Shown: positions 3,001 through 23,239 of the stretch, one piece after another
How positions within the stretch are numbered: position 1 is the first letter of the stretch
Layout of the letters: each line of letters starts with the position of its first letter
NCBI RefSeq assembly: GCF_964204645.1
Contig: NC_134031.1
Location: 868,001 to 932,000, forward strand
From: Tubulanus polymorphus
Lineage: Eukaryota; Animalia; Nemertea
Length of the DNA stretch: 64,000 nt
Direction: 5' to 3'
Notes under the pieces: generated by a model
What the model saw: only the letters and a program-made list of their open reading frames with translations
Databases searched by the model: none
What the model was told of the DNA's origin: nothing
Made by a program: the position numbers and the translations under genes

Positions 3001-6000
3001 GTAATTAGATCCTGATTCCTATCATTAGAGATATTACATAGAGTTTAATTTTTGACTAACGTATTCAATTTTTTTTTAAATGATCAACATAGATTCGTGT
3101 ATAGACCTCACATCTCATGCACTGACACAAAAACAGTCGTCTGTCTAAAGAGCACGATATTCCGAAAATGGTGTCGGTTGTTTTTAAGGTGGTGGAATAA
3201 TGAATATATTTGCAACTTGGCGATGCTCATAATTTCATTTTCAACGTTTTATTTTGAATTTTATAAGGATTCAATTTTCATCGATTAAGATATTTTCTGT
3301 AGCATCAGAAATGTGCATTTATATACGTATTGAATCTGATAGGTAAACGGAGTTTTGAAGTTGAGCCGTAACGAGAATGAATTCAACCGTACATAGAACA
3401 CCATGAATAAATTCACAATTCATTCAGAGTAATTTCAACTATCTACATATCTATATATTTGTTAATAGACAGATGTTTATTTGTAAAACCGCGATCACAT
3501 GCCAAGTGCTTGATCAAGTGTTTGACCTGAGCTAGGTATTTTGGACTGGGCCTAATTGTAGCACGGTCAAATTATTTCGACTGGTTCCGGAAGTGACTCG
3601 CCTCGCTTGCAACAGCACCGTTTTGATAGCATTTTAGCAAGGAGTGATTGTTACGTGTGAACACGCTCTTTTATAAAGTACAGGCTAAATTTGACTCAGG
3701 TCTGATCCGGGCAAAAACGTCTCCATGTGATCAATTTGACTTGGGTCCAAGTCCGGACCAGTTTGACCAGTTCACGTGTGATCGCGGTAAATTCATGTAC
3801 CTATGTTTCACGCACATTTCTGTGATCAGTGTTAGAGGAAAGATCACGCATTCTCCTTTCATTCTTTTCTTCCTCTTCATTTTTCTCACATCGTTTGTAG
3901 GTCCCTCACCTGTCACGTGCCATAAAGTACAGTGTTTCCATGGCAGCAAATGCCAAGTAGAAAACGGACGCGCCAAATGTTTATGTTTGTTTGAATGTGA
4001 TGACCGCGAGGGGGCGCTCGTTTGCGGGTCGAATAAGGAGACGTATGGCGGACTGTGTAGTCTCCAGTTCGAGGCTTGCCGTCTGCAAGAGGAGATAACC
4101 GTTGAGCATTATGGCGCTTGTTCAGGTAAATTTGAAAACAGCTCTAAAATGATTGTTTGGAGGTTTCGGTCATTCAGACCATAAAACTGTTAGGGAATTT
4201 ACCAGGGCTGTTCTTATAGACCGTTTATTGGAACCAGTTCTACAGTAGTTGATAAATTTGACTGTAGACTGTTGAGATCAATGTTTCAACCCGACGTCAA
4301 ATCTAAATCGAGAAACGTAGAGCTGGTTCCAGACCACCAGTGCCCATTCTCCCGAAACATCGAGTTGGGTTCGAATCCCCCGTAATGAGAATTTATTTTT
4401 GATGGAGTATTAATTACGAGCTGTCTGTTAAACCATGCTGGCTGTGTAGGTATGTTTACTATTTGGCGCAAACGTAAGTATAGAGAAGAAATGGTAGCAA
4501 TTTTTAAGTGAATTAGGTATATGTGTTCATTGATACTGGACCTAATAAATACATGAACTAACACAAAAATTAAATGAAAAACACGTAATTAAAAGTTGCT
4601 ATCGTAAACAGAAATATTCAAGAAAACTTTTTCATTCAATCGATGTTTTTCAGGATTATCATCACAACGCATCAATATAATAAATTCTCTATATGGTAAT
4701 TTTTGATATTTTTACAAATTAATGTATTTTATCATCATTTTATTCACCCGAAGTTCAATCAATTTCGAATCGCGAAGTGTGACAGTGTTTGAACGTATGG
4801 ATGAGAGTGAAGTGTGAATTCGGAATCTTGTTGCTACAAAATCTTAGCTTTACAACAAGATCATCACTCTGCTATTTTTCAATTTTCAATATTTCATTAT
4901 TTCATCGTTATTGAATTCTAATATAAACATTAGTCAAACAAAGGAAAGTTATAATCTTTTATTTCAGAAAATTTTCTTGAATCCAGGAAGCACTTCCTGC
5001 ATGTACACAAATATTTTGAATGATGTTTTTGTTCCGAAAAAAATCTATTACAAAAAATAAAAGTCTCCTCCATATCCAATTCAAAGGAATAAACTAGGAA
5101 ATAAGATTATACCAAAAACTCGAGGATTTCAACTTTTCATATACACTTAAAAGTAACTAGAATAGCAACTAGCAATTCTAATATCATTCTAGTAAAATCA
5201 ACAAAACCGTAAGCCGCAGCTTCTGTGTATTTCGAGTATTGAATGATGAACTTTTTGCACTTTACAGATAAATACTATGGACCGACTCCATCTCCGTCGA
5301 GATCGCGTAAAACAACCAGACATATTCATATATCAGCTCCTAAAACAACCCGACATGTCCTAACACCAACAGAAAAACCAAAATCGCGTAAGTGTCTTGA
5401 ATCTCTATTTCAAAAATATTCAATATAATTTACTTGTTAATTAGATATTTTGTTTTAAGAAGGTTTTTTTGCCCGCATGTTAATTTTACTTTTTGGGTTA
5501 ATCGAGAAATAGAATTTTAGGCGGATTCATTTTAGAGAATATATTTTTCATGTTGTCGTGAATCGTCATTTAAATGGATACGGATCCTTTTCTATAATTG
5601 AACGGCATGAGAAGCTGCTGTGCGGCGCATCTCTTCCAGCTCTTGTATTCGTAATGTTGTAATTTTCACTGATTTACAGCCGCCTGTCGCCTGCCGCCAC
5701 CAACCGTCGTTTCAGTTTAACCGAAAATATTTTCAAAATTTGAAAATTGCCTGCTGTATATGTATATGTTGTTGTGTTTGTCTTGTCGTAGATAAAAAAC
5801 GAAAATGGAAAGGTAAAAAGAAGAAAGGCGGTAAAGTAATTAGTGATCGGCTCCAGGGGGATGAGGGTATGTAAGGCGTTGAACGATTGATCACTAGCAC
5901 TGTAAACAGTAAACTGCCTTCTACCTCCACGCTTTCCTTAACCATCAACAACATTATGTATTCAGTTGAAAATTTCATAGCGTTTCGACGGCGAAAAAAT

Positions 6001-9000
6001 GCCTCATTTGCATATGCAAATGCGGCGAGAATTTTATCGATTGTGAGGTCTTTGTTTTTGCAACAAGTGCAGGAGGCTTGCAAAACATTACATAAAAGAT
6101 AGAGGGACCCGCGTCAAAATTTCTTGGTTAAATTTGACCATGCAAAAGTTTTAAATGCTGCAATAGCATTATCTTGACTCAGAGTCAACTCTTAACACGA
6201 TTAGGGAACCGGGTCCAGGAGAATTACATCAAATATGCCGTCGGTGACATGAAAAGGCACAGAGCTGCCAGACCTGGATAATATGTTTCAACGCTATCAA
6301 ATTTTCACGTACCTCTCAGTTTGGAGAAAACCTAGAAAACCAAATCGGGTTTCGTGTTTAGAACCGTGTGCATTTTTAACGAGGGAAATGGCTCGATTAT
6401 ATTCCGGTTAGCACCATTAGATACTAACGACATTTATTTCAGAACGAGGTGAGATAACACGCACTTCCAATGAAACATTCATGGACATTTTAATGGCCTA
6501 TGGGTGTAGTTTCGTGAAATGGTTTAATCAGGGGCGGATCCAGGGGCATGTTGTGACCATGTCGACCAATAAAAAGGGCATACATTCTTAATTTAGGGTG
6601 GAAAGGCATATCAGCAAAATTTTTGAAATTTTACTATCATTTTAGAGCTTTCTGAGCATCTATGAGAGGCATTTAGTCAAGAAACATAAGTTACATATTT
6701 AGGAAAAATAACTTATGTGTATCTCACGAGGTTACAACGGCTAATTTTCATACAGAGAAAAAATTAAAGGGCACTTTAAAATTCCGACCGTGTCGGGCGG
6801 CACGGTCGACACGGTCTGATCCGCCCCTGGTTTAATTGCGGCCGTCTCTGACAATATGAAGTACCAAAAAGCAATAAAATTTCGCGAAGCTTCACCCTGA
6901 GCGCCGTTTACTCGACTGTGGTCACAAATTGATAAAATTTGGTACAATAGTTACAACAAGGAGCACGGTATTTTGAGAAACTGGGCTGAACTTTCAAAGT
7001 CTTAAATTGGACCCGAAAACTGTTCCAGATTTTTGAAAATGCAGCCCAGGATTTCGTAGTACAATTCCCAAACCCTGTTGCCGGTAGCAACTCCCGATAA
7101 CCATCATTACTGTAGCAACTAACAACCACATGTTAGTTTTCCGTTTATAGAGGGCACTCTCTTTACAATCAGACTGGAATGAATTATTCAAAATGCGTTC
7201 GGTATTTCTTAAAGAAATTTGTGACGAAAACACGAAAAGCGCTTCTCTAAAAACGGTTTATGTTTTATTCCTTATTTTTATCCGGTGATTGGGAAAATTT
7301 ACATTCCTTACGTTAGAATGTAGTTTATATTAGCAATAAAACTTCATTTGCAACGTCAGAGTTATCGGAATCATTGTCATATCGTTGATGAGAATTAATT
7401 CCCTCTTTTCTGCGATCTCCGATCTTATTAACGGATTATTTCACATAAAGATCCCTGAATCTACCGAACTCTACAGTAAGAAATGCTCAATTTTTGGATA
7501 GCTGATGGGACAGAATCTGACCGTACGCTTTGAGAGCGATATCTCAGTTGACAAACATGTGCGAATGCAAAGTTGCAAATCGACATTTTTTGCGACAGAA
7601 AATAAGAGCGATTCGCGGTTGTCCAGCTGGTGGCGCCGCCGTTGAGCTCATTGGCAACCAACCAGTCAGAACCGTGGAGGCACCTCAGACATAAAGTTAA
7701 CATTCAACATCTAATCAGTTAATCTCCCTGAGTTAAACAGTTATCTCTTGGGACTTGGGCAGAGTCTACTGTATTTCGATAAGACGTAGGGTATTGATTG
7801 TGAATTATGACGATAAGATCAATGTCTACGATCGAAAAGTTTATTTCCGATAACTCACGCATGCAAGGCATCCAACCCTACCTACCCGACCCCGCATAAC
7901 ATCATGTATATAATATTACTCTTAAAAATCATGTTTAATTCTAACAGGAAAAGTTGGTGGCTCGTGTTTAGTCAACGACGATTGTTTAGCTCCAAATACT
8001 CATTGTAAATGGGGTCGTTGCGAATGTAACGGAGATTACTTCAAATCGACTGATTTAAGATTCTGCTATCCCGGTAAACATATCTGATCTCCTATCGTCA
8101 CTCGTGTCGATACCGAGCGGTCTCAACGCAGACTATTCTCTCTCCTGCGATATTGAGGCAGTAATTACAGGGCGTTTGAGGCCGCGATGTATCGAATGAA
8201 AACATCTACAATCAATATCGGTCGTAAAATCTTAATTCTGGCTCCCAGGTTATGATTTGATTCGAGAGCAGTTAGAAAACTGAAAATGAACTTCACACTT
8301 AAACTCGACTGAACTGGGAATTCCATATTTGCGGAACGGGACCCTAATTTTCATATCGGGTACTATTCAATTAGATTCACACAAATTGGCAGAATAGACA
8401 GCACGGTCTTGTGTCGTAATGATGATGTATTTACTATGTCGTGCAATGAAACGATAAATAGTGAATACAGTGGCGCTGACTGACAGACGGACAACAGACT
8501 GATCATTTTATTGCATGTTAAAACATCAAACAGTTTTTATGATCGATGATTTCTATTTGTATGATTTGAATGATATCTGTCTGTTATTTTTTACTGATAT
8601 GATTGACACCGACTTTGATTATTTAATCACGTGACGTTGAGATATCGAATATTTTGTCTGTGATCGATTTGATGAATTTCAACATCGCAAAAACATTGTT
8701 TCATAGTGTGTTACGAATTTATCAATCGTAAACATTGAGCCGGATGCGACTTTCTGATCTAACATTACAAATTACAGATCAAACACGTAGTCAACTTCAA
8801 ATATCACGTGGAAATAAAAGACTTAATTCGAAAGGCCTCAATAAATCACATTTTATGCCCCCCACGGCGCTTCCGTAGCGAAGGACCGATATTGATTGTA
8901 GATACTATTGGCTATTCCACGGAGATTCTTTGCTGCATCGTCAACTCCTAAAACGCTTTATTACTGACACATTATATTTTAGATGTTTAACACATTATTG

Positions 9001-12000
9001 TTATTGTATATTTACGGTTGCACTTTGTGTGAGTTTTCATTTTACATGTAATATATCATCATTTAACGTGTATTGGGTGTAAATTGTAAAAATGGTTGCT
9101 GTTTCAGTCGGCGTGTATCACATCTTAAAGTAAAAAAAAACTTCTTGAACTTGTTTTCTGATTTCCGTGTCACTGAGTATCACTATTTAAACATTGATGT
9201 GCCTTTTTTTGTTCTGCATACTGAATAAATCGACAAACGGTATAATCTGAATGTTGGGCAATCTACTCTGTGCGGGGGAGTTACGTTTGTCATAAATTCA
9301 ATGAAATGTGATTTCTAATTTTGATTTCTCTCTGCGCATGAGTTGTTTCTTTAGTCACGTGTATCTTGTTATCACAGCAACCTGACATGACTGATGTCAC
9401 TTCCGGTGTCCTTGACACTTCTATCCCATGACGTAACGCATGCATGAAGGTTTCCACTTATATTCTGTTTAAGAATTCTAATTAAGAAACATATTTTATA
9501 TTGTAGCTGCAGCGGTGAAAGTTCCTCAGTTCTCTGGCTCTAGTTTCATGGAGTTGACAATGATGCCGATGCCTAATCGTGACATCGAAGTTCAGATGGA
9601 ATTTCGCTCGTTGAATAACGATGGAATACTGTTATATTGCGGTAAAATGGCGAACGGTCGAGGAGATTTTATATCACTGGCAGTACGAAACGGTTATGTA
9701 GAATTCAGGTATAAACCGCCGTCCTTATCCGGACACTAGTGAAATTCCCTGCACTAAGCACATTACTTATATGTATATATCAGACCCTGTAGTTTATGTC
9801 AATTGATTCGTTGTATAATAATTCCTACATTCAAAGAAACACTTTGCTCTTATTTCTATGAGCCATTTACACATTAAAGGGAATGGCTCGTAGCATTTGA
9901 GTTAAAATCTCTAAATCCTCGTACAATTTTATTCTTCTACTAATAAAGACAGCCACGTCTTGTCAATGAAAACCAACAGAAGAGTTGTTTTCGTTGATTC
10001 GTTATGAAACTTGTTACATATATTACCTGGTATGATTATTTCAGATTCAATTTGGGAACAGGGGCAGCCGTGATAATCAGCCAAAATAGAATAATACTGA
10101 ATCACTATCATCGTATACTCGCAAAACGACACGGACAAACCGGAAGTTTACAGTTAGACGATGACCTTGAGAAGACGGGACAAAGTCAAGGCAGTGCCCT
10201 CTCGATGAACATCGAGGAACCATTTTATATGGGTTTCGTTCCTAACGCGACAGACAGGTATGTATGTATAAAAATTGATTTGGTCATTTAATTTTCGAAG
10301 AATCCGTTAAGATGTCAGTTTGTTTTCTGTTATTTTGATAGGATTATGGGCGATATTGGAGTCAGTGTTGGTTTAGTCGGATGTATACAGAGTTTAACGG
10401 TTTCAAGTCGTAAAGGATCGAAATCTTATAATTTCTACTATCCGGGATCCCCTGACGTCATTAAAGCCCATAAAATAGGTAGGTATCAGCGGTGGCGGCA
10501 CTAGTGAAGCTATGATATCCTCCTCACGTGTGCTGATTGGTATCACGTCATCTTAATCAGATAAAACCTGCAACAGAATTCAACATTTCCCTAATCCGTT
10601 AATAACCGAATACTGCTTATAACATCTCTTTTGATTGCTTCACTTTCCGACCTGTAACAACCTGTTATTAACTAATAACTACCTTTACCCGCTGATAATT
10701 CGGATAATATCCCCGCAAGTTAATTCTGGGTTGTAAAAATGCTGACACTTGCTGAAAGTCATTAATTTGTAACCAAGGATCCAGTTCTACAGTTTGAGTT
10801 TTAAGTTTAATTCTTAGGAGGGAAACTGCTTGGTATACTGGCACGACTATGGAACTGACTCAGTCGTACTGTCGAGATTTGACTCTAAAAGTGGTCTTAA
10901 AGTCTGGTCTTAAGTTGTCAGATAAGCTATAGAACTGAGTTGGTCCTAGACCGGTCTTAGACATTACTGTGTTACTGGATCCAGGTTTATTACCTGCACT
11001 GCTTTATTTCTCTCCTGCTGCGTTTCTAACCAATGAGTTATATATTAATGCATCTATGAATTCTATCGCGTTCAATAATTTACTAAATTTACGAATAAAG
11101 ATTGAGATAATCTCCTGATTGAGCCTAAAACGCGTTATTGGTCACGATAGATTATTTACGATTAGTCCGAATCCGGAGAATTACCGATAAGAATCCAGAG
11201 CTCAGATCCACGGTTATCAAACAGTTAGGATTTGACTCGAGGGTTTAAACATCTGTGGAACTGGGCCCTGAACCAACGCCCAAACTCGAACGCGATAGAA
11301 TACGTGAATTTATTTATATACTGATATCATCATTACTATTATCATCATAATAATCATTATGAAACCGAGCACGCATTAACCCTTTGCTCCTCACTCCCTC
11401 TCACGCAGCGGAATGTGGACATACTCCATGCAGTAGTTTACCCTGTCAAAATGGCGGACTATGTCTAGTTATTGATACTGATACATTTGAATGCATCTGC
11501 GATCAAAACTTCGAAGGTACGTGTATGTTATATGTGTGGACTACTATCACGTGACGTGGCGAGTTTTTGTCATGGTAAAGGTCGCCATTAAGTAACTTAA
11601 ATCGAATTTAGTGGAATTTCAGTGGAACTTAACAAAACTGGCTATACTCTAAATTCTAAATGAGTTCATATAGAGTCATGGTTTATCTGTAGATGGTAAA
11701 CACTGAAGACGGTAACTTCATCAGGTAATGACTCACTCATTTACCTGATGAATCTACCATCTTGGAGTAATCATTGTCAAATGATTACTCAAAGCTACTA
11801 TGAAGCTACAACGTACTATAAGCACGTGGTGCTTGTTATGTCTAAAACAAGTCAGTAAACCTGACTTCCAGGTCTTAATCGTGTTTACTGATTTGACACC
11901 TGGGTCTAGTTCCACAGTTCTGAGTTAAGATTTGACTCAAAGTTTACTCATTGAAAATGAACAAACTTTAACTCTAACTCGCAACCCGTGGATCTGGATC

Positions 12001-15000
12001 CTGGTTACTATGGCACATCTTCGACTATTTAGGCGTTTGAACATTTCTCCGGATGATATTAAAGAGTTTCCGTGTATGAATATTCCAGGTCCACTTTGCT
12101 CTAAAGGAGTTAATCCTTGTTCGACGAATCCGTGTCCAGTCGGCACAACGTGTGTCCTACAACCGAATAGTAAATTCGTTTGCAGACCAGGTAATAACAT
12201 AAAACACCGATTATAACGAGAAAATGAAGATAATCCAAGAAAAACTTGCCTCAAATCTTTTGTATGAATTTGTTTCTTCATTAGATAATTTGCAGTACGA
12301 TCGACATTTTATACCCGAATTTCACGGAGATTCCTACATCGAATATAAATATTCAGCCAGTGCCTATACGAATATCACTTTTGAAGTATGGTTCATATCT
12401 ACGCAACCAAATGGTAAGTATTATATAAAAACGAACAGATCTCGTGGAATGGAAACAAAAAATAGTTATTAGTAGAAGTCGATAATAGATCGATAAGATT
12501 AAAATCCACCATATGCAAAGTCAAAAGATTAAAAACGATATTCATTTTATCAGGAATCGAAATAGAAAATTAAACAGCACTATGTTTTGGGCTCTCTCCC
12601 TCTCCCTCTCTCTCTCTCTCTCTCTAGTTACCATCGTCAGGTGCGAAGAAAATAACGGGGTTTATAGTTAGACTGCCTCCAGAAGCAGTAACTAATATCC
12701 ACAAAATAAATAACATGGTTTGCGCCTGTTTTAACGAACCCCTTTTGGTTAGATAACTGACTATAATTTACTTTCAAAAGACTCGAAACGGAATGAAGTT
12801 GAAACGTATGATGTGCTGGTTTTGTTTTAGGTTTATTGTTATATAACGGTCAAGGAACAGAAGGAAGAGGAGATTTCATCTCATTAAACATCATTGATAG
12901 ATACATTCACTTTAGATTCAATTTAGGCAGTGGCGCGGCCGATATTGTGTAAGTACCCCCGCCGAATGGAATCAGTTGATATATCTAAAATGGGTTCAGT
13001 GGTTAGTATTAGTAGCAATTCATTTGCAAGGGAATCAAATTTGTTTTTTACATTAATTGTCATTCATTCCTCATAGTACAAACTCCTAGGTTTCATTAAG
13101 CATATAAAATATTTAAAAGGCAAAAAACCAAAATAACGTTGGAATTATTGGTTAAACTGAACCAAGTTCTGTTTAAAGTCGCCTGATTTCTTGTCCTAAT
13201 TTCGCACTCTATCTTTTAACAGGAGCGAAGAGAAAATCAAGTTAAATCACTGGTATAAAGTAACTGCTGAAAGACGTAGAAAGCACGGTTTCCTAATCAT
13301 CAATGGCGCCAACCCGATCAGGGGTAAAGCACCGGTACGTATATACACCAATAGGGGGCGATACTGTACGGCATTTCTATGACCTTCACCTCTAACGTAA
13401 CGGATATCTCTTCTATCTCTTTTATCGCTGGTCATACGTGTAAACGATATAAACCGTTATTTTCATCTAATAATTTGCATAATTTATGTGCGTTTCATAT
13501 TCAAATCTATATATGAGACTATGGTGTAATTCAATTTTAGGGTCATAAAATAAGACGTCATAGGGGCGCGTCTAAACGCAAGGTATCAATAAAATACTTG
13601 CTGCTTTGTATCTCCACCAATACGCTATACTGATTGATATCTATATAATCACGTGTCTTTCTTAAAAACCACCTCAGCTGCCAGAGTCGACTCTTCAACA
13701 AATCATCGTGCACCGATCAATTTCTATCTCGCCGCCATCTTTAAATTCTTCAGTTTTTGTCGTCATATTGATGTTGTTTTCATATAAACCGCCAGGGGTC
13801 ACTACGTTAGATACGGAAGCATCCCTGGGATTCTTTGATTGTTTAAAGAGATTTCAATATCTCAGAGTTACATTTGACTCTTGAGTTGAAATTGATTTGC
13901 AAATGTTTGAAATTTTCAGAACAAATCTCAGAATTTCTTGCTCTACCAATGAGTCCCTGGGGGAAGCTTCCATTGATATGTAAAAACCATCTTCTACTCC
14001 ACAAAACACATGTTAATTTCAGGTCGATTTTTGTTTTGACGATTCAAAGCTTGTCACACACCATATCTGCAAAATCCAATATGGAATTTTATTTAATTTT
14101 TCTAATTATACTATCGTACTAGGCACCGAGACAAGGCTTCATCTTAGATCGAAGTTTAGAGTATAGTTATTTCTGATATTATATTTTTTCAATGTTAGCA
14201 CACTACTTTATTATGTGTTTCACAATAGCTATTGTTTACATACGGGTGTGTGGACTGTATGCAAATCGGCGTTAAATTATGCAGAATACTATAGCAACAG
14301 TCACGCCCACCGCTAGTTCTAACAACTGAGCTCAGGTATTCGTGTACTATTTTGAAATTCCGGTCAGCCATTGATAAATATTTGGATATGAGAATTTAGT
14401 TATCTCTACCGGAGCCATCCCTCCCTCACTGGCGCTCACTCGCAATTATTCGGATGTTCGCTTGTTCGGATGTCCCCAGCTTGTGTATCTGCTATATTTC
14501 AGTTTTGGTTAAATTGATTGTTATTCTAATTTTTAGGGTGATTTGATCTCATTAAATCTCGATCAGCCGTTGTTGATTGGTGGATTCAGTGACGCTAGGA
14601 TCATTAACCCTTTGTCCGGTGTGACGACAGGCTTGCGAGGTGCTGTACAACGGGTAAGTTACAAAAACTTGGAGGGTCGTTTTATTCACTTCATAAGTGT
14701 TGGAAAACGCGGTGTACTAATATAGCGTAGTCAAGTCGAAAAAGCACTTTGCTCTCGAACCAAAAGGGCCAAATGAATGTTCTGAACGAGAGACTTATAT
14801 TAACATCTTATGCTCTTTATTTAAGTTGTTGATAAATGGTGAATATATCGAAAGATTGATGGAAACCGCTGTTTCCGTGCATAAGATAACGCCATACGAC
14901 GGTCCTCCCTGTGACAATAATCCTTGTCTTAATGGCGGAAAATGTTACGCAGTTTTCAACAGGGCCAAATGTGATTGTCCCCTGCAGTATGGTGGACGCC

Positions 15001-16904
15001 ATTGCGAGCGTTGTAAGTAGTTTCACGATTCATTCATCGTGCCCTGATAGTTGTTCTAACTTTGTCGATAATCCCGAAACTTATTTTGCAGATCTTCATG
15101 AAATGATGAGCTCTTCCAATAGTAAACCGGTCCACTGTGACGGCACAACTTATCTCCAGTATCTCAACAGGATACACATAGGGTACGTATATCTGAAGGT
15201 ATATGGAGCCTGGACCCTCTATTCCCTCTGACATCCAAAGACCGATCGTCCACACTTCACATGTGTTCAGAATTTGACCTGAGACATTCTTAATTAAAGA
15301 TTAAATACAATCACTAAACATGAGATATTTTATCAGCGCACTTTCGTGTTATCGTCCAGACTTTAAGAGTAAATTCTGGAGGGTTTAGGGGCTGCAGATT
15401 GGTACCTTTATTAATACAAAAACACGTTAACGATACCTATTGTAGTATATATACCATTTATGATACCTATTTCAGTGAAAAAGGCCAGAAAGTCAATGAT
15501 TTCCGGGTTCGCCTAAAGACAAACTCTTCCAATGGCTTAGTTTTGATTCAGCATCAAGGGAAAACCGTCAATCAAGATTATTTGAGTTTGGCGATTAGAG
15601 ACGGATTCGTAGAACTAAGTTACAACTTGGGTAAAAATACAGTCGACGCGTTGTTCGTTTTGAAGTCTTCAATGAAGGTTGACGATGGAGTCTGGCATAC
15701 TATAATAGCTAAAAGGTAATTAGATAGGTAGATTATAAGTGACATAGTTCTCTGACTCGGCGGTGATTTAAGCAATTTAAATAAACTCATTTTAATGATA
15801 TCTACTGCAAGCACCACACGGCCCTACAATCCTGTGAACTTATATAATACCGCAGGTGACCTTAACCCCCGATACATTGAACTTAGTCCGCTGAAACGAC
15901 GTATCTTGAGATTGGTGGCAGCACCGTACGGTAATACATGTAGTGATGTCGTTGTTTAATTCGATTGTTACAGAGAGAAAAGGAAAAGCACGTTACAGAT
16001 CGATAATACAGAACCAGTAACTGATAGATCTGCTAAAGGAGCTTCACAGTTAGACACTAACTCATTTCTATGGATCGGTAACTATTTGACACATTCTACC
16101 ATCACACAGGGGCCTGGCACATATTTAGTGACCCCATAGTATCCTAGGTACCAAATCAACTGGTTTGGGTGAAACAATTTTTGTCAGTTCCCTCTGTAGT
16201 GTACTACATAAATGAACCATTTGGATCCGGTTGCATAGTAGCAGTAACATATCCAGTTCCAGAGTTTTGTATAAGTTTGACTCGTCAGTTAAAATCAGTC
16301 GATTGCAAAATGTTCGAATTCTTGATACAAATTGAAATCAGAACTGTGGAACTTCAGAGCTTTGGAAGTCTTCCTCGTAATAATCCGTAAATTTAAATAT
16401 CACTATCCTAGGACAGTTTTTAGGGGGGGGGGGTGTTTACGGGGCACACACTACTGTCTCCATCAATAAGACGTACCAAGATTTTGAAACCGGCACATTT
16501 TTTATACTCATCCCTTCAGAAATTGTATTCCTTCAGAAACATCTAACACGAATAGAGAAACCCCAGTTGTTAGAGTGGCTAACTGTTTGGGCTTAGAGCT
16601 GCCTTTTCTTCCTCCCATCATTCTGATTTTCCTTGCTCCAAACCCCACTTGTGGCCTTAAGGTTATGAGTTGCCTTTTCTTCCTCCGAGCCTTTAGATTT
16701 TACTAGCTCCAGCCCCTGTGTTGGATCTAATTGTTTGTTTGTGTGTGTTTTAAAGGTGGTATGAAACATTTACCCAGTGGATTTCCTCGTCAATATTCTC
16801 ACGGTTTTAATGGATGTATCGTCGAGGTTTTCATCGATGGAGAACGACTGGACTTGGTCAATAATCGCCAGAACCAAGTCACACTGGCTTTCTGTGATAA
16901 ATAA
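1..16904 (+). CDS. AGRN: Agrin, 3' portion (5' end lies upstream of the window): Cys-rich linker, 2 laminin-EGF, follistatin/Kazal, S/T linker, EB-like module, LamG1, EGF, truncated EGF, LamG2, EGF, LamG3
   Basis: Phase-compatible GT-AG exons: <1-49, 1031-1123, 1817-1978, 2385-2528, 3901-4125, 5268-5387, 7948-8073, 9507-9708, 10045-10257, 10342-10478, 11409-11516, 12089-12190, 12285-12413, 12831-12948, 13223-13334, 14537-14653, 14826-15012, 15092-15182, 15476-15715, 15974-16077, 16756-16904 (stop TAA). Agrin hallmarks: [39 protein letters not shown], Kazal [12 protein letters not shown]...[10 protein letters not shown] in two LamG domains, [10 protein letters not shown]...[14 protein letters not shown]. 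Confidence 0.95.
415..456 (+). ncRNA. Penelope-type minimal type-I hammerhead ribozyme motif, partly decayed
   Basis: attc-CTGAAGA-a-gac...gtc-GAAA-tgtt-gaat: helix I attc/gaat, helix II gac/gtc. More decayed relatives lie at 287-330 (-) and 63247-63282 (+). Confidence 0.5.
2127..2180 (+). ncRNA. Minimal type-I hammerhead ribozyme motif in an agrin intron
   Basis: CTGATGA-a-gctac...gtagc-GAA-AGCT-C: intact core, 5-bp helix II, palindromic helix III (AGCT); helix I is imperfect. Confidence 0.5.
3488..3788. mobile_element. MITE-like element, ~300 bp
   Basis: Terminal inverted repeats accgcgatcaca...tgtgatcgcggt, internal ttgacc/ggtcaa sub-repeats, no coding capacity. Confidence 0.55.
6529..6829. 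mobile_element. MITE (non-autonomous DNA transposon) in an agrin intron
   Basis: Perfect 12-bp TIRs caggggcggatc/gatccgcccctg flanked by a 7-bp direct repeat gtttaat (6522-6528 and 6830-6836). Confidence 0.85.
11899..12004. mobile_element. Short dispersed MITE family with ends like GGATCCAGTTCCACAGTT
   Basis: Imperfect TIRs cctgggtctagttccacagtt / aacccgtggatctggatcctgg. Related ends recur near 1515, 1755, 6205, 10777-10985, 11255, 16251-16355, 52321 and 63918. Confidence 0.65.
13541..13582 (+). CDS. AGRN: Candidate alternative 42-nt agrin exon ([14 protein letters not shown]) at the LamG2 y/A site
   Basis: tcaattttag|GGTCAT...CGCAAG|gtatca. Phase 0-0, frame-preserving, no stop, 7 of 14 residues K/R. 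It lies in the intron between ...RGKAP and GDLISLNL... Confidence 0.7.
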
Positions 16905-18767
16905 CCTACAGCGACGCTCGGTGGCGATCGACCACACTATAATTTACCTGTATCCTGGAATAACTCTTCATCGTCAAAATGACCATTTCGATTATCGTGT
17001 CTTTTATAGAAGGCTAGAATGTGGTGTAAAATGCTTAATCAGTTTGAACCAGTAGATCAAATCGGTTAACGTTAACCATTTTTTGAGTAACTGGCCACTG
17101 ATTTCATTTCGTCATATTTGAAATACGTTGCTTGTATCTAACAGTTGAGTTTGTATGTAGTGTGTATAAGATATTATAATGAGATGTATATAATTCTGAG
17201 AAGCTGCCATCTAGCGGACAAACGTGGCACTAAAACAAATTGAAATAGATAAACCAATTGAAATGAACATACATAGTGTGACGTCATAATACACGTGTAC
17301 ATACCCATCATCAAATATCTTTATAATTACTGTAATTAACTAAAAACAAATGATGAATAAATATCGATTATTATTAAATCTATGTCTTCGTTTTCGGAGT
17401 CTAAATTCATGGAACCAGAAATGTTGAAGCAGTGCAACTATCGTACTAGTATTCCGGTCAATCCATCCTCGCTTGCCAGGGGTCCGGTATCGCTCCCGAA
17501 CTCGCTTCCACCAGCGAAACGGCTTTAGCAGAGTGGGTTCGAATCCCCTGACGGGTGAAGATGGGCCAATAGGGTACACCTTGAAACATAGCTAGCTCGG
17601 TGGCAGCATCTTACTGTACGTCCCCTGGCGGGCATTCTGTGAAGTAATTGTGTGATACCGAAGGCTGACGATAGTTGTCCTCAATTTTGCCTAGTTCACT
17701 TAAACAGCACGCGAATTTGACGATGGCAGCACCGTACGGTACCCTACCGGAATTTCTGTGAACTAATGTAATTGTAGACTGGTTACCGGTTTCTATCTTC
17801 AATTTAGACTGGTTGCCTGTCCCATTCAATATATATATTCTAATTGAAGATAGAGACCGGTAACCAGTCTATCTTCAATTATGAATGGCTGAGAGGCAAC
17901 CAGTCTGGTAATTTTGTGTTTTTTTAACAGACGCTATTGCGGGACAGCAATCAGCTGTTTTCGTATATAGTCAACTAGAACAATTTCCGGGATATAATTC
18001 TGACTAACTGACATTCGGTTTCACTAAGTTCGACAATAGATTCGATGTAGGTTAAAACCAGCAGTTCATTGTCGCTGATGCCGAGTGATGGTCCCGATAC
18101 TTATGCGATCGCTGGGACCGTACAGTGCTGCCACCAAGTCTCGTTAGAATCTGAGAAATATGATCGATTATTTCGTAAAAAAAGCTGCTGATGCGCAACA
18201 TGGCGCAACATATTATACTACAATTAGTATCATCTACCTCTGGCAATCGAGGATGATGGAGAATGGAGAATTATTGGCTGATAAAGAATATTTTTTATTA
18301 TAACTTAAAATGAATAATGATTGCAGTATGTACAGTAGTTCACCAAGAATCTTAGTGTCTGATGTACCACAGGTGGTTACCACAGGATCGTAGATACACT
18401 GTGGAGACAGCCACACTGCCAGCACTGGGTGAAGTACAGTAGAAGCCCGATACAAAAAGTCCTGTAATATTACCCGAAATCAGAACTTGAATTTACAACG
18501 CGGACAATCCTAAGATATATAGTCAACTCCTTCATTCAAAATATCTCTCAGGGTAGGAATTCAATTGTATATACGATAAAATGTATAAACACAATATTAG
18601 TACAACTTTAATCGATGCCGCTTGTCAATGTATGGAAGTCTTAGTTAATTGTGTTGTAGCGTTTAAACTGCTTGAAAAAAATGGATTGATTATTCATTGA
18701 ATGACACGAAAATGTTTATTTGTTTTTTTTTTCACAATCACATGAGACACTTAATCAGATTTCATTC

Positions 18768-18989
18768 CAGTGGCGGATTTAGCCTACCGCACTTGCCGCT
18801 AATGCGGTAGTCAACATTTTTCCTCTAACAACATTTTATTCATTTCATGGATGGACTTGACTTAGCTGATTCCTTGGAAAAAAGTACCCATATTAAAACA
18901 GGATTTTTCTCTTCCAAAACCCAGGAAATGTCATCTCAGCCCTTTAAATTTTTCAAAATTATCATATTATGCCTCTGGATCCGCCACTG
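18768..18989. mobile_element. MITE inserted into the 3' coding end of GPCR copy 1
   Basis: TIRs cagtggcggat / atccgccactg with a flanking direct repeat cattc (18763-18767 and 18990-18994). It is absent at the matching site of GPCR copy 2 (~21650). Confidence 0.9.
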
Positions 18990-20045
18990 CATTCTACATT
19001 TCTTACCACGATGACAACTAAAACACAAGTTTCTAATCGTATCTCTAAACACGGGTAATGTACGTAAGTATATAAAGAAATTAATTCGGTAAACAAATTG
19101 ACGCTGGCCGTATAACAAAACCGTGCATACAAGATTGAATAGTCTCAAGGCACCGCGGACAGATGCACTGCGCGCTACAGTAACGGAGAAACCGTATAAT
19201 TCGTATGGAAAAACAACGACTACAAATATAAGAATCGTATAAAACATGGTTTTATTTGCGCTATTTAAGATTGTAGTTCCAGTAGCTCTATTACGTATTC
19301 GGGCGGTTAAACCGATTAGTACTAGAACCACTAAACACGGCACCAAGCCTCGAAAAAAAGATACAAGGCCAAGTGAAAGGAGCCAAACTCTAAGACTTGT
19401 ATAATGAGAAGAATACACGAGGAGGCTTTCACAACAAATTGTGTCATTTCCACAATTTCTGATAACAACAAGAACACCGCCATTATTAAGACTGCAACTC
19501 ACAAGGAACATTAGAAACACTACTACCCGTCTCCTTGAGTTAGTGACATGTTTTCGGTGAAAGAATGGCCACGCTATTGACAAATACCTCTCTACGGCGA
19601 TAGCAACTACGATCCAATTTGAGAAACCCTCTGATAAATAGCGTGTAATATTTCCTAATATCATTATGCATCCTTTATCCGTGTTAATATTAATTAAACG
19701 TGCGATCGATGCAAATCTTTTCAAGGATATTGAACACTGGTTTCCCGTTAAGATTCCTTGATAATGAATTGTACAATCGATGTTTACTATGTACAAATAT
19801 AATCGAATAAAGAAAAGGGGAAATTGGGTCAAACTATTTAGCACATAGACACCGTCAGAAACAGCCATCGTAAATAGATAGATGAAAGTCGCTCGAACTG
19901 AACGAAAATATCGACATTTGATCAGTGCAATGATCGTCAGCAAATTGAGCGCCAAAAACAGAGGATCAAAACTACAGATTAACGCATCCATGGCATAAAA
20001 AATATCAAACAAAATAGTCGCTGCGTTCCGTTCGAAACCCATCAC
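18936..20045 (-). CDS. Intronless class-A (rhodopsin-like) orphan GPCR, peptide-receptor/chemoreceptor-like, copy 1 (369 aa)
   Basis: Seven hydrophobic segments; TM1 N, TM2 MAVSD, TM3 VERYLSIAWPF, TM5 VPC, TM6 FP, TM7 INFFIY, helix 8 FR. Confidence 0.9.
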   Translation of the reverse strand: MMGFERNAATILFDIFYAMDALICSFDPLFLALNLLTIIALIKCRYFRSVRATFIYLFTMAVSDGVYVLNSLTQFPLFFIRLYLYIVNIDCTIHYQGILTGNQCSISLKRFASIARLININTDKGCIMILGNITRYLSEGFSNWIVVAIAVERYLSIAWPFFHRKHVTNSRRRVVVFLMFLVSCSLNNGGVLVVIRNCGNDTICCESLLVYSSHYTSLRVWLLSLGLVSFFRGLVPCLVVLVLIGLTARIRNRATGTTILNSANKTMFYTILIFVVVVFPYELYGFSVTVARSASVRGALRLFNLVCTVLLYGQRQFVYRINFFIYLRTLPVFRDTIRNLCFSCHRGKKCRMQWRIQRHNMIILKNLKG

Positions 20046-20517
20046 AGTAATACCCGGTGATACGTAGTAATATTTTCGTGTGGTCAGTGGTAAATACCGT
20101 AGTTTAACTCATTTGGATTTACAATATATCTAGAAATACGATCAGACGAAAGTTGCGCGAACAAAACGGAAACGACGATGTTTGATCAGTGAAACGACGT
20201 AGAGAGGATATAAACTTATAACTAGTGCTTCCGAGGCAAAATAAACACGTATCAATATAATCTGCAGTTTCCGTTCAAAACCCATCCGAGCAGTAACACC
20301 ACCTAATGGTGTATGTACTACGTCAGACTAGCGAACGTTAAACTGTTCAAGACACGTATGTAATTAGTAACCGATACATCACAGATCTATGAAACCAATT
20401 TTATTTTTAATTTAGGGCGCTTGTTAAAATAGTCATGCTTATTTTTGTAACTGGAAAATCGTGATATATTTTCTATATCCATTCATCATGTTTGCATGGC
20501 ACATGTTAAACTGGCTG

Positions 20518-21035
20518 TAGTGGATTCCCTCAAGTTTGCATCGATGGAGAACGACTCGATTTGGTCAACAATCGCCAGAAACCAGTCACACTGGCTTTCT
20601 GTCAGGTCGGAATCACATTTGCGTGACGTCCTAGCGATACATAGAAATGATCCCTAAAAGTATGATCTTGATAAATAGCCTACAGCGACGCGCGGCGGCG
20701 ATCGACCACACTATAATTTACCTGTATCCTGGAATAACTCTTCATCGTCGAAATGACCATTTCGATTATCGTTTCTTTTATAGAACGCTTGAACGTGGTG
20801 TAAAATGCTCAATCAATTTGAACAATAAAACACCAAAATGTCGGTTGTTAAAAAGTCGTCTGTCAACCAGCGAGTCAAATTAAACACACACAACTGTTGA
20901 AGTGCATCCTCGTGGTTTACATCGACCAACGTTAGAGTAACTGGACACTTATTTCATTTCGTCGTATTTGAAATAAGTTGCTTGTATCTAACAGTTGATT
21001 TTGTACGCAGTGTGTATAAGATATTATAATGAGAT
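20518..21035 (+). pseudogene. Duplicated fragment of the agrin terminal exon and 3' UTR
   Basis: Aligns to ~16775-17186 ([13 protein letters not shown].. VTLAFC, then UTR). It has a ~36-nt deletion, a 67-nt insertion (20603-20669), and lacks the original splice acceptor. Confidence 0.85.
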
Positions 21036-21642
21036 GCACGAATACGAATATCATCTACCCCTGGCAGTCGAGGATGATGGAGAATGGGAAATAATTGGAA
21101 CTGATGAAATATTTGTGAGAATTGATTCTTCATTATACCTTCAATAATTAATGATTCTTATATAAACAGTGAGATGTTTGATGGAGAAAACACTAAAATA
21201 CTTCCGATAATAAGTATTCGATAAGAGAAACAAGAAACGAATAAAGACCAAAAACGATTACCAAATACCGAATTGAATATGGCCGATTTATATCGTCAAA
21301 CTTGAAACAAACTCTCACATTAAACGAATCTCTCGGGATGCATTTTGACATACGATAACACGAATACATGTTTAAAGAAATGTCACCAAGAACATATAGA
21401 ATGGTATTCGGAAATAATATTTTAAAACTCTGCAAAAAAGATCGTGAAGTGAAGTTGCATTTGTCTTGATAATGAATTCAATAATAGTACAACTTTAATC
21501 AATGCAGCTTGTAAATGTATGGACGTCTTTTAGTAAATTGTGTTGTAGCATTTGAACTGCTTGAAATGAAGGATTGATGATTCATTGAACGACACGAAAA
21601 TGTTTATTTGGTTTTTTTTTCACAATCACAGGAGACACTTAA

Positions 21643-22704
21643 TCAGATTTCATTCTCTACGTATTTCTTACCACGATGACAACTAAAACACAAGTTTCTA
21701 ATCGTATCTCTAAACACGGGTAATGTACGTAAGTATATAAAGAAATTTTTTCGGTAAACAAATTTACGCTGGCCGTATAACAAAACCGTGCATACAAAAT
21801 TGAATAGTCTCAAGCTACTATTGACAGATGCACTACGTGCAACAGTAACGAGGAAAGCGTATAATTCGTATGGAAAAACAACGACTACAAATATAAGGAT
21901 CGTATAAAACATGGTTTTATTTGCGCTATTTGAGATTGTAGTTCCAGTAGCTCTATTACGTATTCGGGCGGTTAGAGTCATTAGAACTAGAACCACTAAA
22001 CACGGCACCAAGCCTCGAAAAAAACTAATAATAGCACTAGAAAAAAGTCGAGCATCTCGACCTTTATTAGTATACGTGAGGAGGGTTTCACAACAAATTG
22101 TGTTATTTCCACATTTTCCGATAACAACAAGAACACCGCCATCGTTGAGACTGCAACTCACAAGGAACATTAGAAACACTACTACCCGTCTCCTTGAGTT
22201 AGTGACATGTTGTCGGTGAAAGAATGGCCACGCTATTGACAAATACCTCTCCACGGCGAGACCAACTACGATCCAATTTGAGAAACCCTCTGATAAATAG
22301 CGTGTAATATTTCCTAATATCATTATGCATCCTTTATCCGTGTTAATATTAATTATACGAGCGATCGATGCAATTTTTTTCAAAGGTATTGAACACTGGT
22401 TTCCCGTTAAATCTCCTCGATAATGAATTGTACAATCGATGTTTACTATGTTCAAATATAATCGAATAAAGGAAAGGGGAAATTGGGTCAAACTATTTAG
22501 CACATAGACACCGTCAGAAACAGCCATCGTAAATAGATACACGAAAGTCGCTCGAACTGAACGGAAATAACGACATTTGATCAGTGCAATGATCGTAAGA
22601 AAATTAAGCGCGAAAAACAGAGGATCAAAACTACACATTAACGCATCCATGGCATAATATATGTCCATCAAAATAGCAATTGCGTTCAGATTGGAATCCA
22701 TCAT
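21643..22704 (-). CDS. Intronless class-A orphan GPCR, copy 2 (353 aa)
   Basis: Close paralog of 18936-20045 with the same motifs (MAVSD, VERY, NFFIY). Upstream sequence 22776-23035 is nearly identical to 20145-20400. Confidence 0.88.
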   Translation of the reverse strand: MMDSNLNAIAILMDIYYAMDALMCSFDPLFFALNFLTIIALIKCRYFRSVRATFVYLFTMAVSDGVYVLNSLTQFPLSFIRLYLNIVNIDCTIHYRGDLTGNQCSIPLKKIASIARIININTDKGCIMILGNITRYLSEGFSNWIVVGLAVERYLSIAWPFFHRQHVTNSRRRVVVFLMFLVSCSLNDGGVLVVIGKCGNNTICCETLLTYTNKGRDARLFSSAIISFFRGLVPCLVVLVLMTLTARIRNRATGTTISNSANKTMFYTILIFVVVVFPYELYAFLVTVARSASVNSSLRLFNFVCTVLLYGQRKFVYRKNFFIYLRTLPVFRDTIRNLCFSCHRGKKYVENEI

Positions 22705-23239
22705 CAGATATTACGTGTGGTCTGTGGTAAACACCGTAGGTTTACCGATCGAGATTTAGATTACAAAGAAAATTAGACGAAAGTTGCGCGAACAAAACGG
22801 AAACGACGATGTTTGATCAGTGAAACGACGTAGAGAGGATATAAACTTATAACTAGTGCTTCCGAGGCAAAATAAACACGTATCAATATAATCTGCAGTT
22901 TCCGTTCAAAACCCATCCGAGCAGTAACACCACCTAATGGTGTATGTACTACGTGATAGTAGCGAACGTTAAACTGTTCAAGACACGTAATTCATGTAAT
23001 TAGTAATCGATACATCACAGATCTATGAAACCAATCCTCAATTTCTACGTTTTAATCGGCGCAAAAAAGTAAAGGTTATTTTTGTATCTAGAAAGTCACG
23101 ATATATTTTCTCTGTTTATCCGAATTCATCGTACATCATTTAATGAAAATAACAACCTATAATTCTTCATACATAACTCGTACATCATAAACATGTGACG
23201 ATATCTATATACAATCTAAACACGGTATTTAAAATGAGA

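What the first reader, a model, noticed from the sequence alone, without database searches (positions are those of the whole stretch)
13541..13582. Basic cassette exon at the exact agrin y/A splice site in an invertebrate
Seen: inside the 1.2-kb phase-0 intron between ...NPIRGKAP and [12 protein letters not shown]... lies ttttag|42 nt|gtatca encoding [14 protein letters not shown]; the ORF track misses it. Established: vertebrate agrin has an alternative 12-nt exon (KSRK) at the homologous LamG2 position (GESP^VPHTVLNLKEPL) that confers heparin binding and is typical of neural isoforms. Inference: the y-site heparin-binding switch is either ancestral to bilaterians or arose convergently. The insert ends in SKRK.
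Basis: partly seen in the sequence, partly recalled or inferred. Interest (0 to 1): 0.8.

Follow-up and report, generated by a model that had tools for sequence, protein, structure and literature searches.

The report
Basic mini-exon in ribbon-worm agrin
A 42-base exon coding for a very basic 14-residue loop lies in a ribbon worm's agrin gene at exactly the place where vertebrate agrin takes its heparin-binding KSRK insert; it is already in a public gene model and its upstream splice junction is seen in RNA, but most transcripts skip it and its function is untested.

Summary
Window 13541-13582 is ttttag|42 nt|gtatca and encodes [14 protein letters not shown], inside a 1202-nt phase-0 intron of an agrin gene.

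The exons match verbatim the NCBI protein 'agrin-like [Tubulanus polymorphus]' (a nemertean). That public model already contains the 14 residues between ...GKAP and GDLISLNL....

Alignment with fish agrin isoforms (GEAP[KSRK]NLHVDLNLKE) puts the insert in the same columns as the vertebrate y/A insert. The domain's best structural match is mouse agrin G2.

RNA contigs from two studies show the skipped junction 13334>14537 as the main form. One contig joins 13334>13541, so the acceptor is used. That contig then runs on unspliced to 14495, and I did not see the donor junction 13582>14537.

By itself a basic frame-keeping AG..GT segment in this intron has roughly a 1-in-10 chance.

Gene models of amphioxus (GGPSNNVPE) and abalone (EPPRAQ) also carry optional, non-basic inserts at this site. 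Many other invertebrate models carry none.

Most likely this is a low-inclusion alternative exon at a recurrent splice site, with its basic charge evolved independently of vertebrates. Heparin binding is inferred only.

No conservation test in close relatives was possible.

The parts
12285..12413 (+). agrin LG2 exon (first of the domain)
   Evidence: RNA contig joints 12190>12285 and 12413>12831. Part of the public model P0233.
12831..12948 (+). agrin LG2 exon (…[28 protein letters not shown]…)
   Evidence: Pfam Laminin_G_1/2. RNA joints. Found verbatim in P0233.
13223..13334 (+). LG2 exon ending …NPIRGKAP, with donor CCG|gtacgt; the exon boundary is in phase 0
   Evidence: RNA joints 12948>13223 and 13334>14537. 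Found verbatim in P0233.
13335..13540 (+). upstream part of the y-site intron, spliced out when the cassette acceptor is used
   Evidence: Joint 13333>13540 (cut +1), GT..AG, in one contig of RNA run X2. X2 has no contig over 13336-13539.
13541..13582 (+). 42-nt cassette encoding [14 protein letters not shown] (net charge about +7, contains I-R-R-H-R-G = XBBXBX). Acceptor caattttag|GGT; weak donor AAG|gtatca.
   Evidence: sequence. (acceptor junction in RNA). (present in NCBI model P0233). (donor matches 5 of 9 U1-consensus positions, against 6-8 for neighbouring donors). (lies in a surface loop, in the same alignment columns as vertebrate KSRK).
13583..14536 (+). downstream part of the intron; retained up to 14495 in the only contig that uses the cassette acceptor. 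An in-frame stop lies 16 codons after the cassette.
   Evidence: X2 record 2 lies on 13540-14495 without a break. Translation. Single copy in the genome.
14537..14653 (+). LG2 exon starting [16 protein letters not shown]
   Evidence: RNA joints. Found verbatim in P0233.

Best explanation
The segment is a real, mostly skipped alternative exon of the agrin gene of the nemertean Tubulanus polymorphus. It lies in the ancient phase-0 intron that splits the LG2 domain at the vertebrate y/A splice position.

When included, it adds 14 residues (9 of them K, R or H, none acidic) to the flexible loop on the ligand-binding rim of LG2. By analogy with vertebrate KSRK, this should create a heparin/heparan-sulfate-binding patch and change how LG2 binds glycan ligands such as dystroglycan.

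Shown: the sequence, the homologous position, use of the acceptor, existence of the skipped form, and inclusion in a public gene model.

Inferred: use of the donor in mature mRNA, the charge-dependent function, any neural bias, and independent (convergent) origin of the basic character.
For: - Gene identity. Laminin-EGF, Kazal and LamG-EGF-EGF-LamG-EGF-LamG pieces lie on the + strand. The exons are identical to NCBI 'agrin-like [Tubulanus polymorphus]' P0233, whose Pfam list includes NtA.
- Position. In alignment A1 the 14 residues occupy the same columns as fish KSRK. The LG2 model has pLDDT 90.5 and its best PDB match is mouse agrin G2, 3pve, with TM 0.94 by target. The insert falls in a loop between strands, where pLDDT drops to 67-81.
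- RNA. The skipped joint 13334>14537 is in contigs of two studies. The joint 13334>13541, with GT..AG ends, is in one contig of X2.
- Public model. P0233 reads …[26 protein letters not shown]….
- The site is used elsewhere. Amphioxus isoforms occur with and without GGPSNNVPE, encoded by a 27-nt exon with AG/GT ends in the orthologous intron. Abalone isoforms occur with and without EPPRAQ in two species.
- Function of the vertebrate insert: PMC6450144.
Against: - The donor junction 13582>14537 was not seen in any of four runs. The one contig that uses the acceptor continues unspliced for 913 nt and would hit a stop after 16 more codons.
- That contig has only 26 letters on the upstream side, and its depth (10.9) is small beside the skipping contig (475.8).
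- The donor is weak.
- The public model is a computed prediction and may rest on the same reads.
- No relative closer than about 50% identity could be examined, so conservation is untested.
- No basic candidate exists in the Lingula or sea urchin introns.
- A basic AG..GT open segment is expected about once in ten such introns.
Confidence: 0.55

Rival explanations
1. A cryptic or unproductive alternative 3' splice site. A minority of transcripts splice from 13334 to the AG at 13540 and keep the rest of the intron, giving a premature stop (nonsense-mediated decay or a dead-end intermediate). The neat 42-nt exon in the public model would then be the annotation program's way of closing the reading frame, not a real mRNA.
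For: The only RNA record with the acceptor junction runs on unspliced to 14495. A stop follows 16 codons after the cassette. The donor is weak. Apparent abundance is low. No conservation evidence exists.
Against: A GT lies exactly where the frame can rejoin the next exon. The coded peptide is unusually basic. The same position carries optional exons in vertebrates, amphioxus and abalone. NCBI's model chose the exon although a strongly supported skipping intron was available. Contig assembly drops rare links, so the missing donor junction proves little.
Confidence: 0.3
2. The exon is real, but its role is not heparin binding. The multibasic stretch (R-R-H-R, K-R-K) in an exposed loop could be a cleavage site for a furin-type or other basic-residue protease, so inclusion would make LG2 cleavable.
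For: The sequence has R-x-x-R and K-R-K in a low-confidence surface loop. That agrin is processed by proteases is established knowledge (neurotrypsin in vertebrates), cited from memory, not from a tool.
Against: No evidence here. The known vertebrate cleavage sites are elsewhere in the protein. The direct precedent at this position is heparin binding.
Confidence: 0.07
3. A constitutive exon, as the single public model implies.
For: P0233 is the only listed product and it contains the insert.
Against: Contigs of two independent RNA studies join 13334 directly to 14537, and these are the deepest contigs.
Confidence: 0.03
4. A chance open AG..GT segment that is never used.
For: There are 47 frame-keeping segments in this intron. 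About 0.1 basic ones are expected.
Against: A GT..AG junction onto exactly this AG is present in RNA.
Confidence: 0.03

Closest known systems
Vertebrate agrin y (rat) / A (chick) splice insert KSRK in LG2
   Same: It has the same gene family, the same domain (LG2) and the same alignment columns, between G-x-[AS]-P and x-x-x-x-LNL. It is a phase-0 cassette inside the same intron, is optional, and is basic with no acidic residue, ending in S-K-R-K against K-S-R-K (PMC6450144).
   Different: It is 42 nt and 14 residues instead of 12 nt and 4. The host is a protostome (nemertean). There is no sequence homology beyond composition. Full inclusion, tissue bias and heparin binding are not shown. The literature I could search treats y and z sites as vertebrate- or chordate-specific (PMC1939731; PMC12445529).
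Optional inserts at the same LG2 position in amphioxus (GGPSNNVPE) and abalone (EPPRAQ) gene models
   Same: They occupy the same columns, and forms with and without the insert exist. In amphioxus it is a 27-nt exon with AG/GT ends in the orthologous phase-0 intron.
   Different: These inserts are neutral or mixed in charge and unrelated in sequence. They are known only as computed isoforms; I did not examine RNA for them.
Splice inserts in LNS/LG domains of neurexins (SS2, SS3, SS4) and agrin LG3 (z/B)
   Same: These are short optional inserts in loops on the rim of an LG fold that tune ligand binding. Neurexin LNS and agrin G3 structures are among the fold matches.
   Different: They involve different domains, loops and ligands. 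No alternative exon was seen in the z-equivalent intron 16080-16755 here.

Membership tests
Agrin (gene) | Domain order: NtA, Kazal/follistatin repeats, two laminin-EGF, then LG-EGF-EGF-LG-EGF-LG at the C-terminus | tested here: met
   Pfam on exon pieces. The identical public protein P0233 carries NtA, Kazal, laminin-EGF, EGF and Laminin_G families. Best matches are named agrin in many phyla. No SEA family is listed for P0233 or for the other invertebrate agrins, unlike the vertebrate ones.
Agrin (gene) | The domain holding the insert is LG2, not LG1 or LG3 | tested here: met
   It is the second of three LG domains along the gene. The AlphaFold model's best PDB match is mouse agrin G2, 3pve (E 8e-18, 33% identity, rmsd 1.7).
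Agrin y/A-site alternative exon | Insert between the G-x-[AS]-P turn and the x-x-x-x-LNL strand of LG2, in a phase-0 intron | tested here: met
   Same columns as fish KSRK in alignment A1. Intron phase and position are shared with amphioxus, Lingula and sea urchin.
Agrin y/A-site alternative exon | Both included and skipped mRNAs exist | tested here: inconclusive
   The skipped junction is in two studies. The upstream inclusion junction is in one contig. The downstream junction was not seen. The included form is present in the NCBI model.
Agrin y/A-site alternative exon | Basic insert that confers heparin binding and lowers dystroglycan binding | not testable with these tools
   Composition is met: 7 K/R plus 2 H of 14, an XBBXBX motif. 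Binding needs protein work. Precedent: PMC6450144.
Agrin y/A-site alternative exon | Inclusion enriched in neural tissue | not testable with these tools
   Run tissues are coded or unknown. Only contigs were available, not reads.
Agrin y/A-site alternative exon | Descent from the vertebrate exon (sequence or regulatory homology) | tested here: not met
   There is no similarity beyond charge. Inserts in amphioxus and abalone are unrelated. No basic candidate is in the Lingula or sea urchin introns. No GCAUG and no YCAY clustering around the exon.

The most novel reading that the evidence does not exclude
The LG2 y/A position of agrin is a bilaterian-wide alternative-splicing site rather than a vertebrate invention. 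It is used in a nemertean, a gastropod, amphioxus and vertebrates. The insert is free to change, and a heparin-binding (basic) version has arisen at least twice.
Probability: 0.35. Interest if true: 0.7.

Novelty: new member of a known kind. Interest (0 to 1): 0.55.

Why it matters
The papers I could search state that agrin's A/y and B/z splice sites are specific to vertebrates (C. elegans study, PMC1939731) or discuss only the z exons as a chordate feature (PMC12445529).

An optional, strongly basic insert at the y position in a nemertean would have two consequences, especially alongside optional inserts at the same place in abalone and amphioxus models. It would move the origin of splicing at this site much deeper, or show that it evolves repeatedly. 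It would also offer a natural experiment on how loop charge on an LG domain tunes binding to heparan sulfate and dystroglycan-type ligands outside the vertebrate neuromuscular junction.

The test is cheap: one RT-PCR and one heparin column.

Tried and rejected
1. Close-relative conservation could not be tested.
   - A word search with the stop-free frame around exon 13223-13334 found no candidate.
   - A search with the LG2 piece of P0233 found only distant fragments at 31-36% identity.
   - The nearest relative found, Lineus longissimus isoform X19, is about 50% identical and has no insert. Its gene DNA is not on record.
   - DNA for abalone, Ptychodera and Owenia agrin was also unavailable.
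2. RNA. Only one run search and one lay were allowed, and both returned contigs, not reads. Junction counts, inclusion level and tissue could not be measured. X3 and X4 look like DNA-type libraries (patchy, unspliced) and add nothing.
3. Regulatory motifs. There is no GCAUG in the intron, and YCAY density is near the window mean.
4. Recursive splicing was rejected. The acceptor is AG|GGT, not AG|GT, and the intron is short.
5. An intronic polyadenylated end was considered, because an AATAAA lies at 13588. It was rejected because the contig continues 900 nt further.
6. A repeat or transposon origin was rejected. The intron is single-copy in the 268-Mb genome.
7. I built no joined exon model of my own and sent none to any search or fold. 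Window exons were searched one by one by reference. For the joined protein I used the public protein P0233 by its id.

Full report
**1. The observation.** The 42 bases encode [14 protein letters not shown] and follow ttttag, and gtatca comes next. The upstream exon ends ...NPIRGKAP at 13334 (CCG|gtacgt). The downstream exon begins [12 protein letters not shown] at 14537. The intron is 1202 nt and in phase 0.

By itself this is weak. The intron holds 47 frame-keeping, stop-free AG..GT segments. Across both strands of the window, segments of at least 8 residues with at least half K/R occur at about 9 independent places. That is about 0.1 expected in an intron of this size.

**2. The gene.** Pieces of the + strand match laminin-EGF (two), Kazal, and LamG-EGF-EGF-LamG-EGF-LamG. 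A profile-free search of 1.8 billion representatives with the LG3 exon returned agrin-like proteins from many phyla at about 40-50% identity.

A word search seeded with the Lingula agrin C-terminus then returned P0233, NCBI 'agrin-like [Tubulanus polymorphus]', 1850 residues. Four window exons occur in it verbatim, and the rest of the C-terminus matches the RNA-defined exons. The window is therefore from this nemertean or something nearly identical. The genome is 268 Mb and the intron is single-copy in it.

**3. The exon is already in a public model.** P0233 reads ...[34 protein letters not shown].... The exon is thus not new to the databases. I found no paper that mentions it or any invertebrate y-site insert.

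**4. RNA.** No run is labelled RNA, but runs X2 (2024) and X5 (2014, another study) hold spliced contigs and are therefore RNA. They define these exons:
- 12285-12413
- 12831-12948
- 13223-13334
- 14537-14653
- 14826-15012
- 15092-15182
- 15476-15715
- 15974-16079
- 16756 onward

The skipped junction 13334>14537 is present in both runs. In X2 it lies in the deepest contig (475.8).

One X2 contig (981 nt, depth 10.9) joins 13334 to 13541 with GT..AG ends, so the cassette's acceptor is used. Three cautions apply to this contig:
- It has only 26 letters on the upstream side, about what a k=31 graph leaves at a branch.
- It continues without a break through 13582 to 14495.
- Read in frame, it meets a stop 16 codons after the cassette.

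No contig shows 13582>14537. X2 has nothing over 13336-13539, so molecules that carry the downstream intron part have mostly lost the upstream part.

Contig assembly removes weak links next to deep paths, so the missing donor junction is not evidence of absence. It does leave full inclusion unproven by my own data.

The donor AAG|gtatca matches 5 of 9 U1-consensus positions, against 6-8 for the neighbouring donors. That is weak, as is common for optional exons.

**5. Is it the y/A site?** Yes.
- Fish agrin isoforms in the search output read GEAP[KSRK]NLHVDLNLKE with and without the four residues. Rarer variants VRKS and VRDSEP also occur.
- In a 61-sequence alignment of LG2 domains, the 14 Tubulanus residues fall in the same columns.
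- An AlphaFold model of the Tubulanus LG2 piece, taken from the public protein by id, has mean pLDDT 90.5. The insert lies in a loop between strands, where confidence falls to 67-81.
- The model's best solved match is the G2 domain of mouse agrin (3pve, E 8e-18, rmsd 1.7 Å).
- PMC6450144 states that KSRK lies in the J-K loop next to the putative Ca2+ site, introduces a heparin-binding site and weakens alpha-dystroglycan binding.

**6. Other animals.** The intron position and phase are shared by amphioxus, Lingula and sea urchin.
- Amphioxus RefSeq isoforms differ by GGPSNNVPE (GGQSNNVPE in B. lanceolatum) at exactly this place. In B. floridae this is a 27-nt exon, aaaag|...|gtaatg, in the middle of the orthologous 2-kb intron.
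- Haliotis cracherodii and H. asinina isoforms differ by EPPRAQ at the same place.
- A Ciona model has four extra residues there.
- Models of Lingula, Owenia, Lineus (isoform X19), a chiton, oysters, mussels, clams, many arthropods and sea urchin have no insert.
- The Lingula and sea urchin introns hold no basic candidate.

Optional inserts at this loop are therefore not confined to vertebrates, at least in gene models. Their sequences are unrelated, and only vertebrates and Tubulanus have a basic one.

**7. Reading.** Most likely (about 0.55) this is a genuine, mostly skipped alternative exon. It adds a +7 loop containing an XBBXBX motif (I-R-R-H-R-G) to the ligand-binding rim of LG2. By analogy it should add heparin/heparan-sulfate binding and alter glycan-ligand binding.

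The main rival (about 0.3) is an unproductive alternative 3' splice site whose tidy 42-nt form exists only in the annotation.

A constitutive exon and a never-used chance segment are both contradicted. A protease-site role for the multibasic loop is possible but unsupported.

On evolution, the data fit a very old or repeatedly used splice position with independently evolved basic inserts. They do not support descent of this exon from the vertebrate one.

**8. Limits.**
- I had contigs only, from one lay. I have no read counts and no tissue information.
- No relative closer than about 50% identity was available.
- The gene models of other species were not checked against RNA.
- I made no joined exon model of my own. 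Window exons were searched singly by reference, and the joined protein was used only as the public record P0233.
Runs X2 and X5 do hold spliced agrin contigs.

**9. Verdict.** This is a new member of a known kind: y/A-type splicing of agrin LG2, here in a protostome. Interest is moderate to good, pending one RT-PCR.

Noticed in passing
L002:31374-31400 (Branchiostoma floridae agrin locus); proteins P0151-P0164: Amphioxus agrin isoforms differ by a 9-residue, non-basic insert (GGPSNNVPE) at the y/A position. It is encoded by a 27-nt exon with AG/GT ends in the orthologous phase-0 intron (L002 30589-32585).
   Followed up: partly
proteins P0197-P0200, P0202 versus P0194, P0195: Abalone (Haliotis cracherodii, H. 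asinina) agrin isoforms occur with and without EPPRAQ at the same LG2 position. This is a protostome case in gene models. The genomic DNA could not be fetched.
   Followed up: partly
window 20534-21036 (also 21564-22989 versus 18676-20358): A second, 88-94% identical copy of the end of agrin's last exon and its 3' flank lies about 3.7 kb downstream of the real one (16827-17186). Further 2.6-2.9 kb-spaced duplicated blocks lie beyond it. It reads as a partial tandem duplication of the gene's 3' end.
   Followed up: partly
window 15216-15379 (intron 15183-15475): Contig depth jumps to about 4,500-18,800 in three runs, with many loose ends and back-joints. This looks like a high-copy, transcribed repeat inside this agrin intron.
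   Followed up: no
window 16080-16755: This is the intron at the place equivalent to the vertebrate z/B site of LG3. The RNA contigs of X2 and X5 join 16079 to 16756 directly, and no alternative exon appears.
   Followed up: partly
window 13664: The X2 RNA contig lacks one A of an A5 run in the retained intron part. It is probably an allele or a difference between individuals.
   Followed up: no
window 12586-12633: A (CT/GA)n microsatellite lies in the intron between the first two LG2 exons. The reads tool skipped it as a repeat.
   Followed up: no
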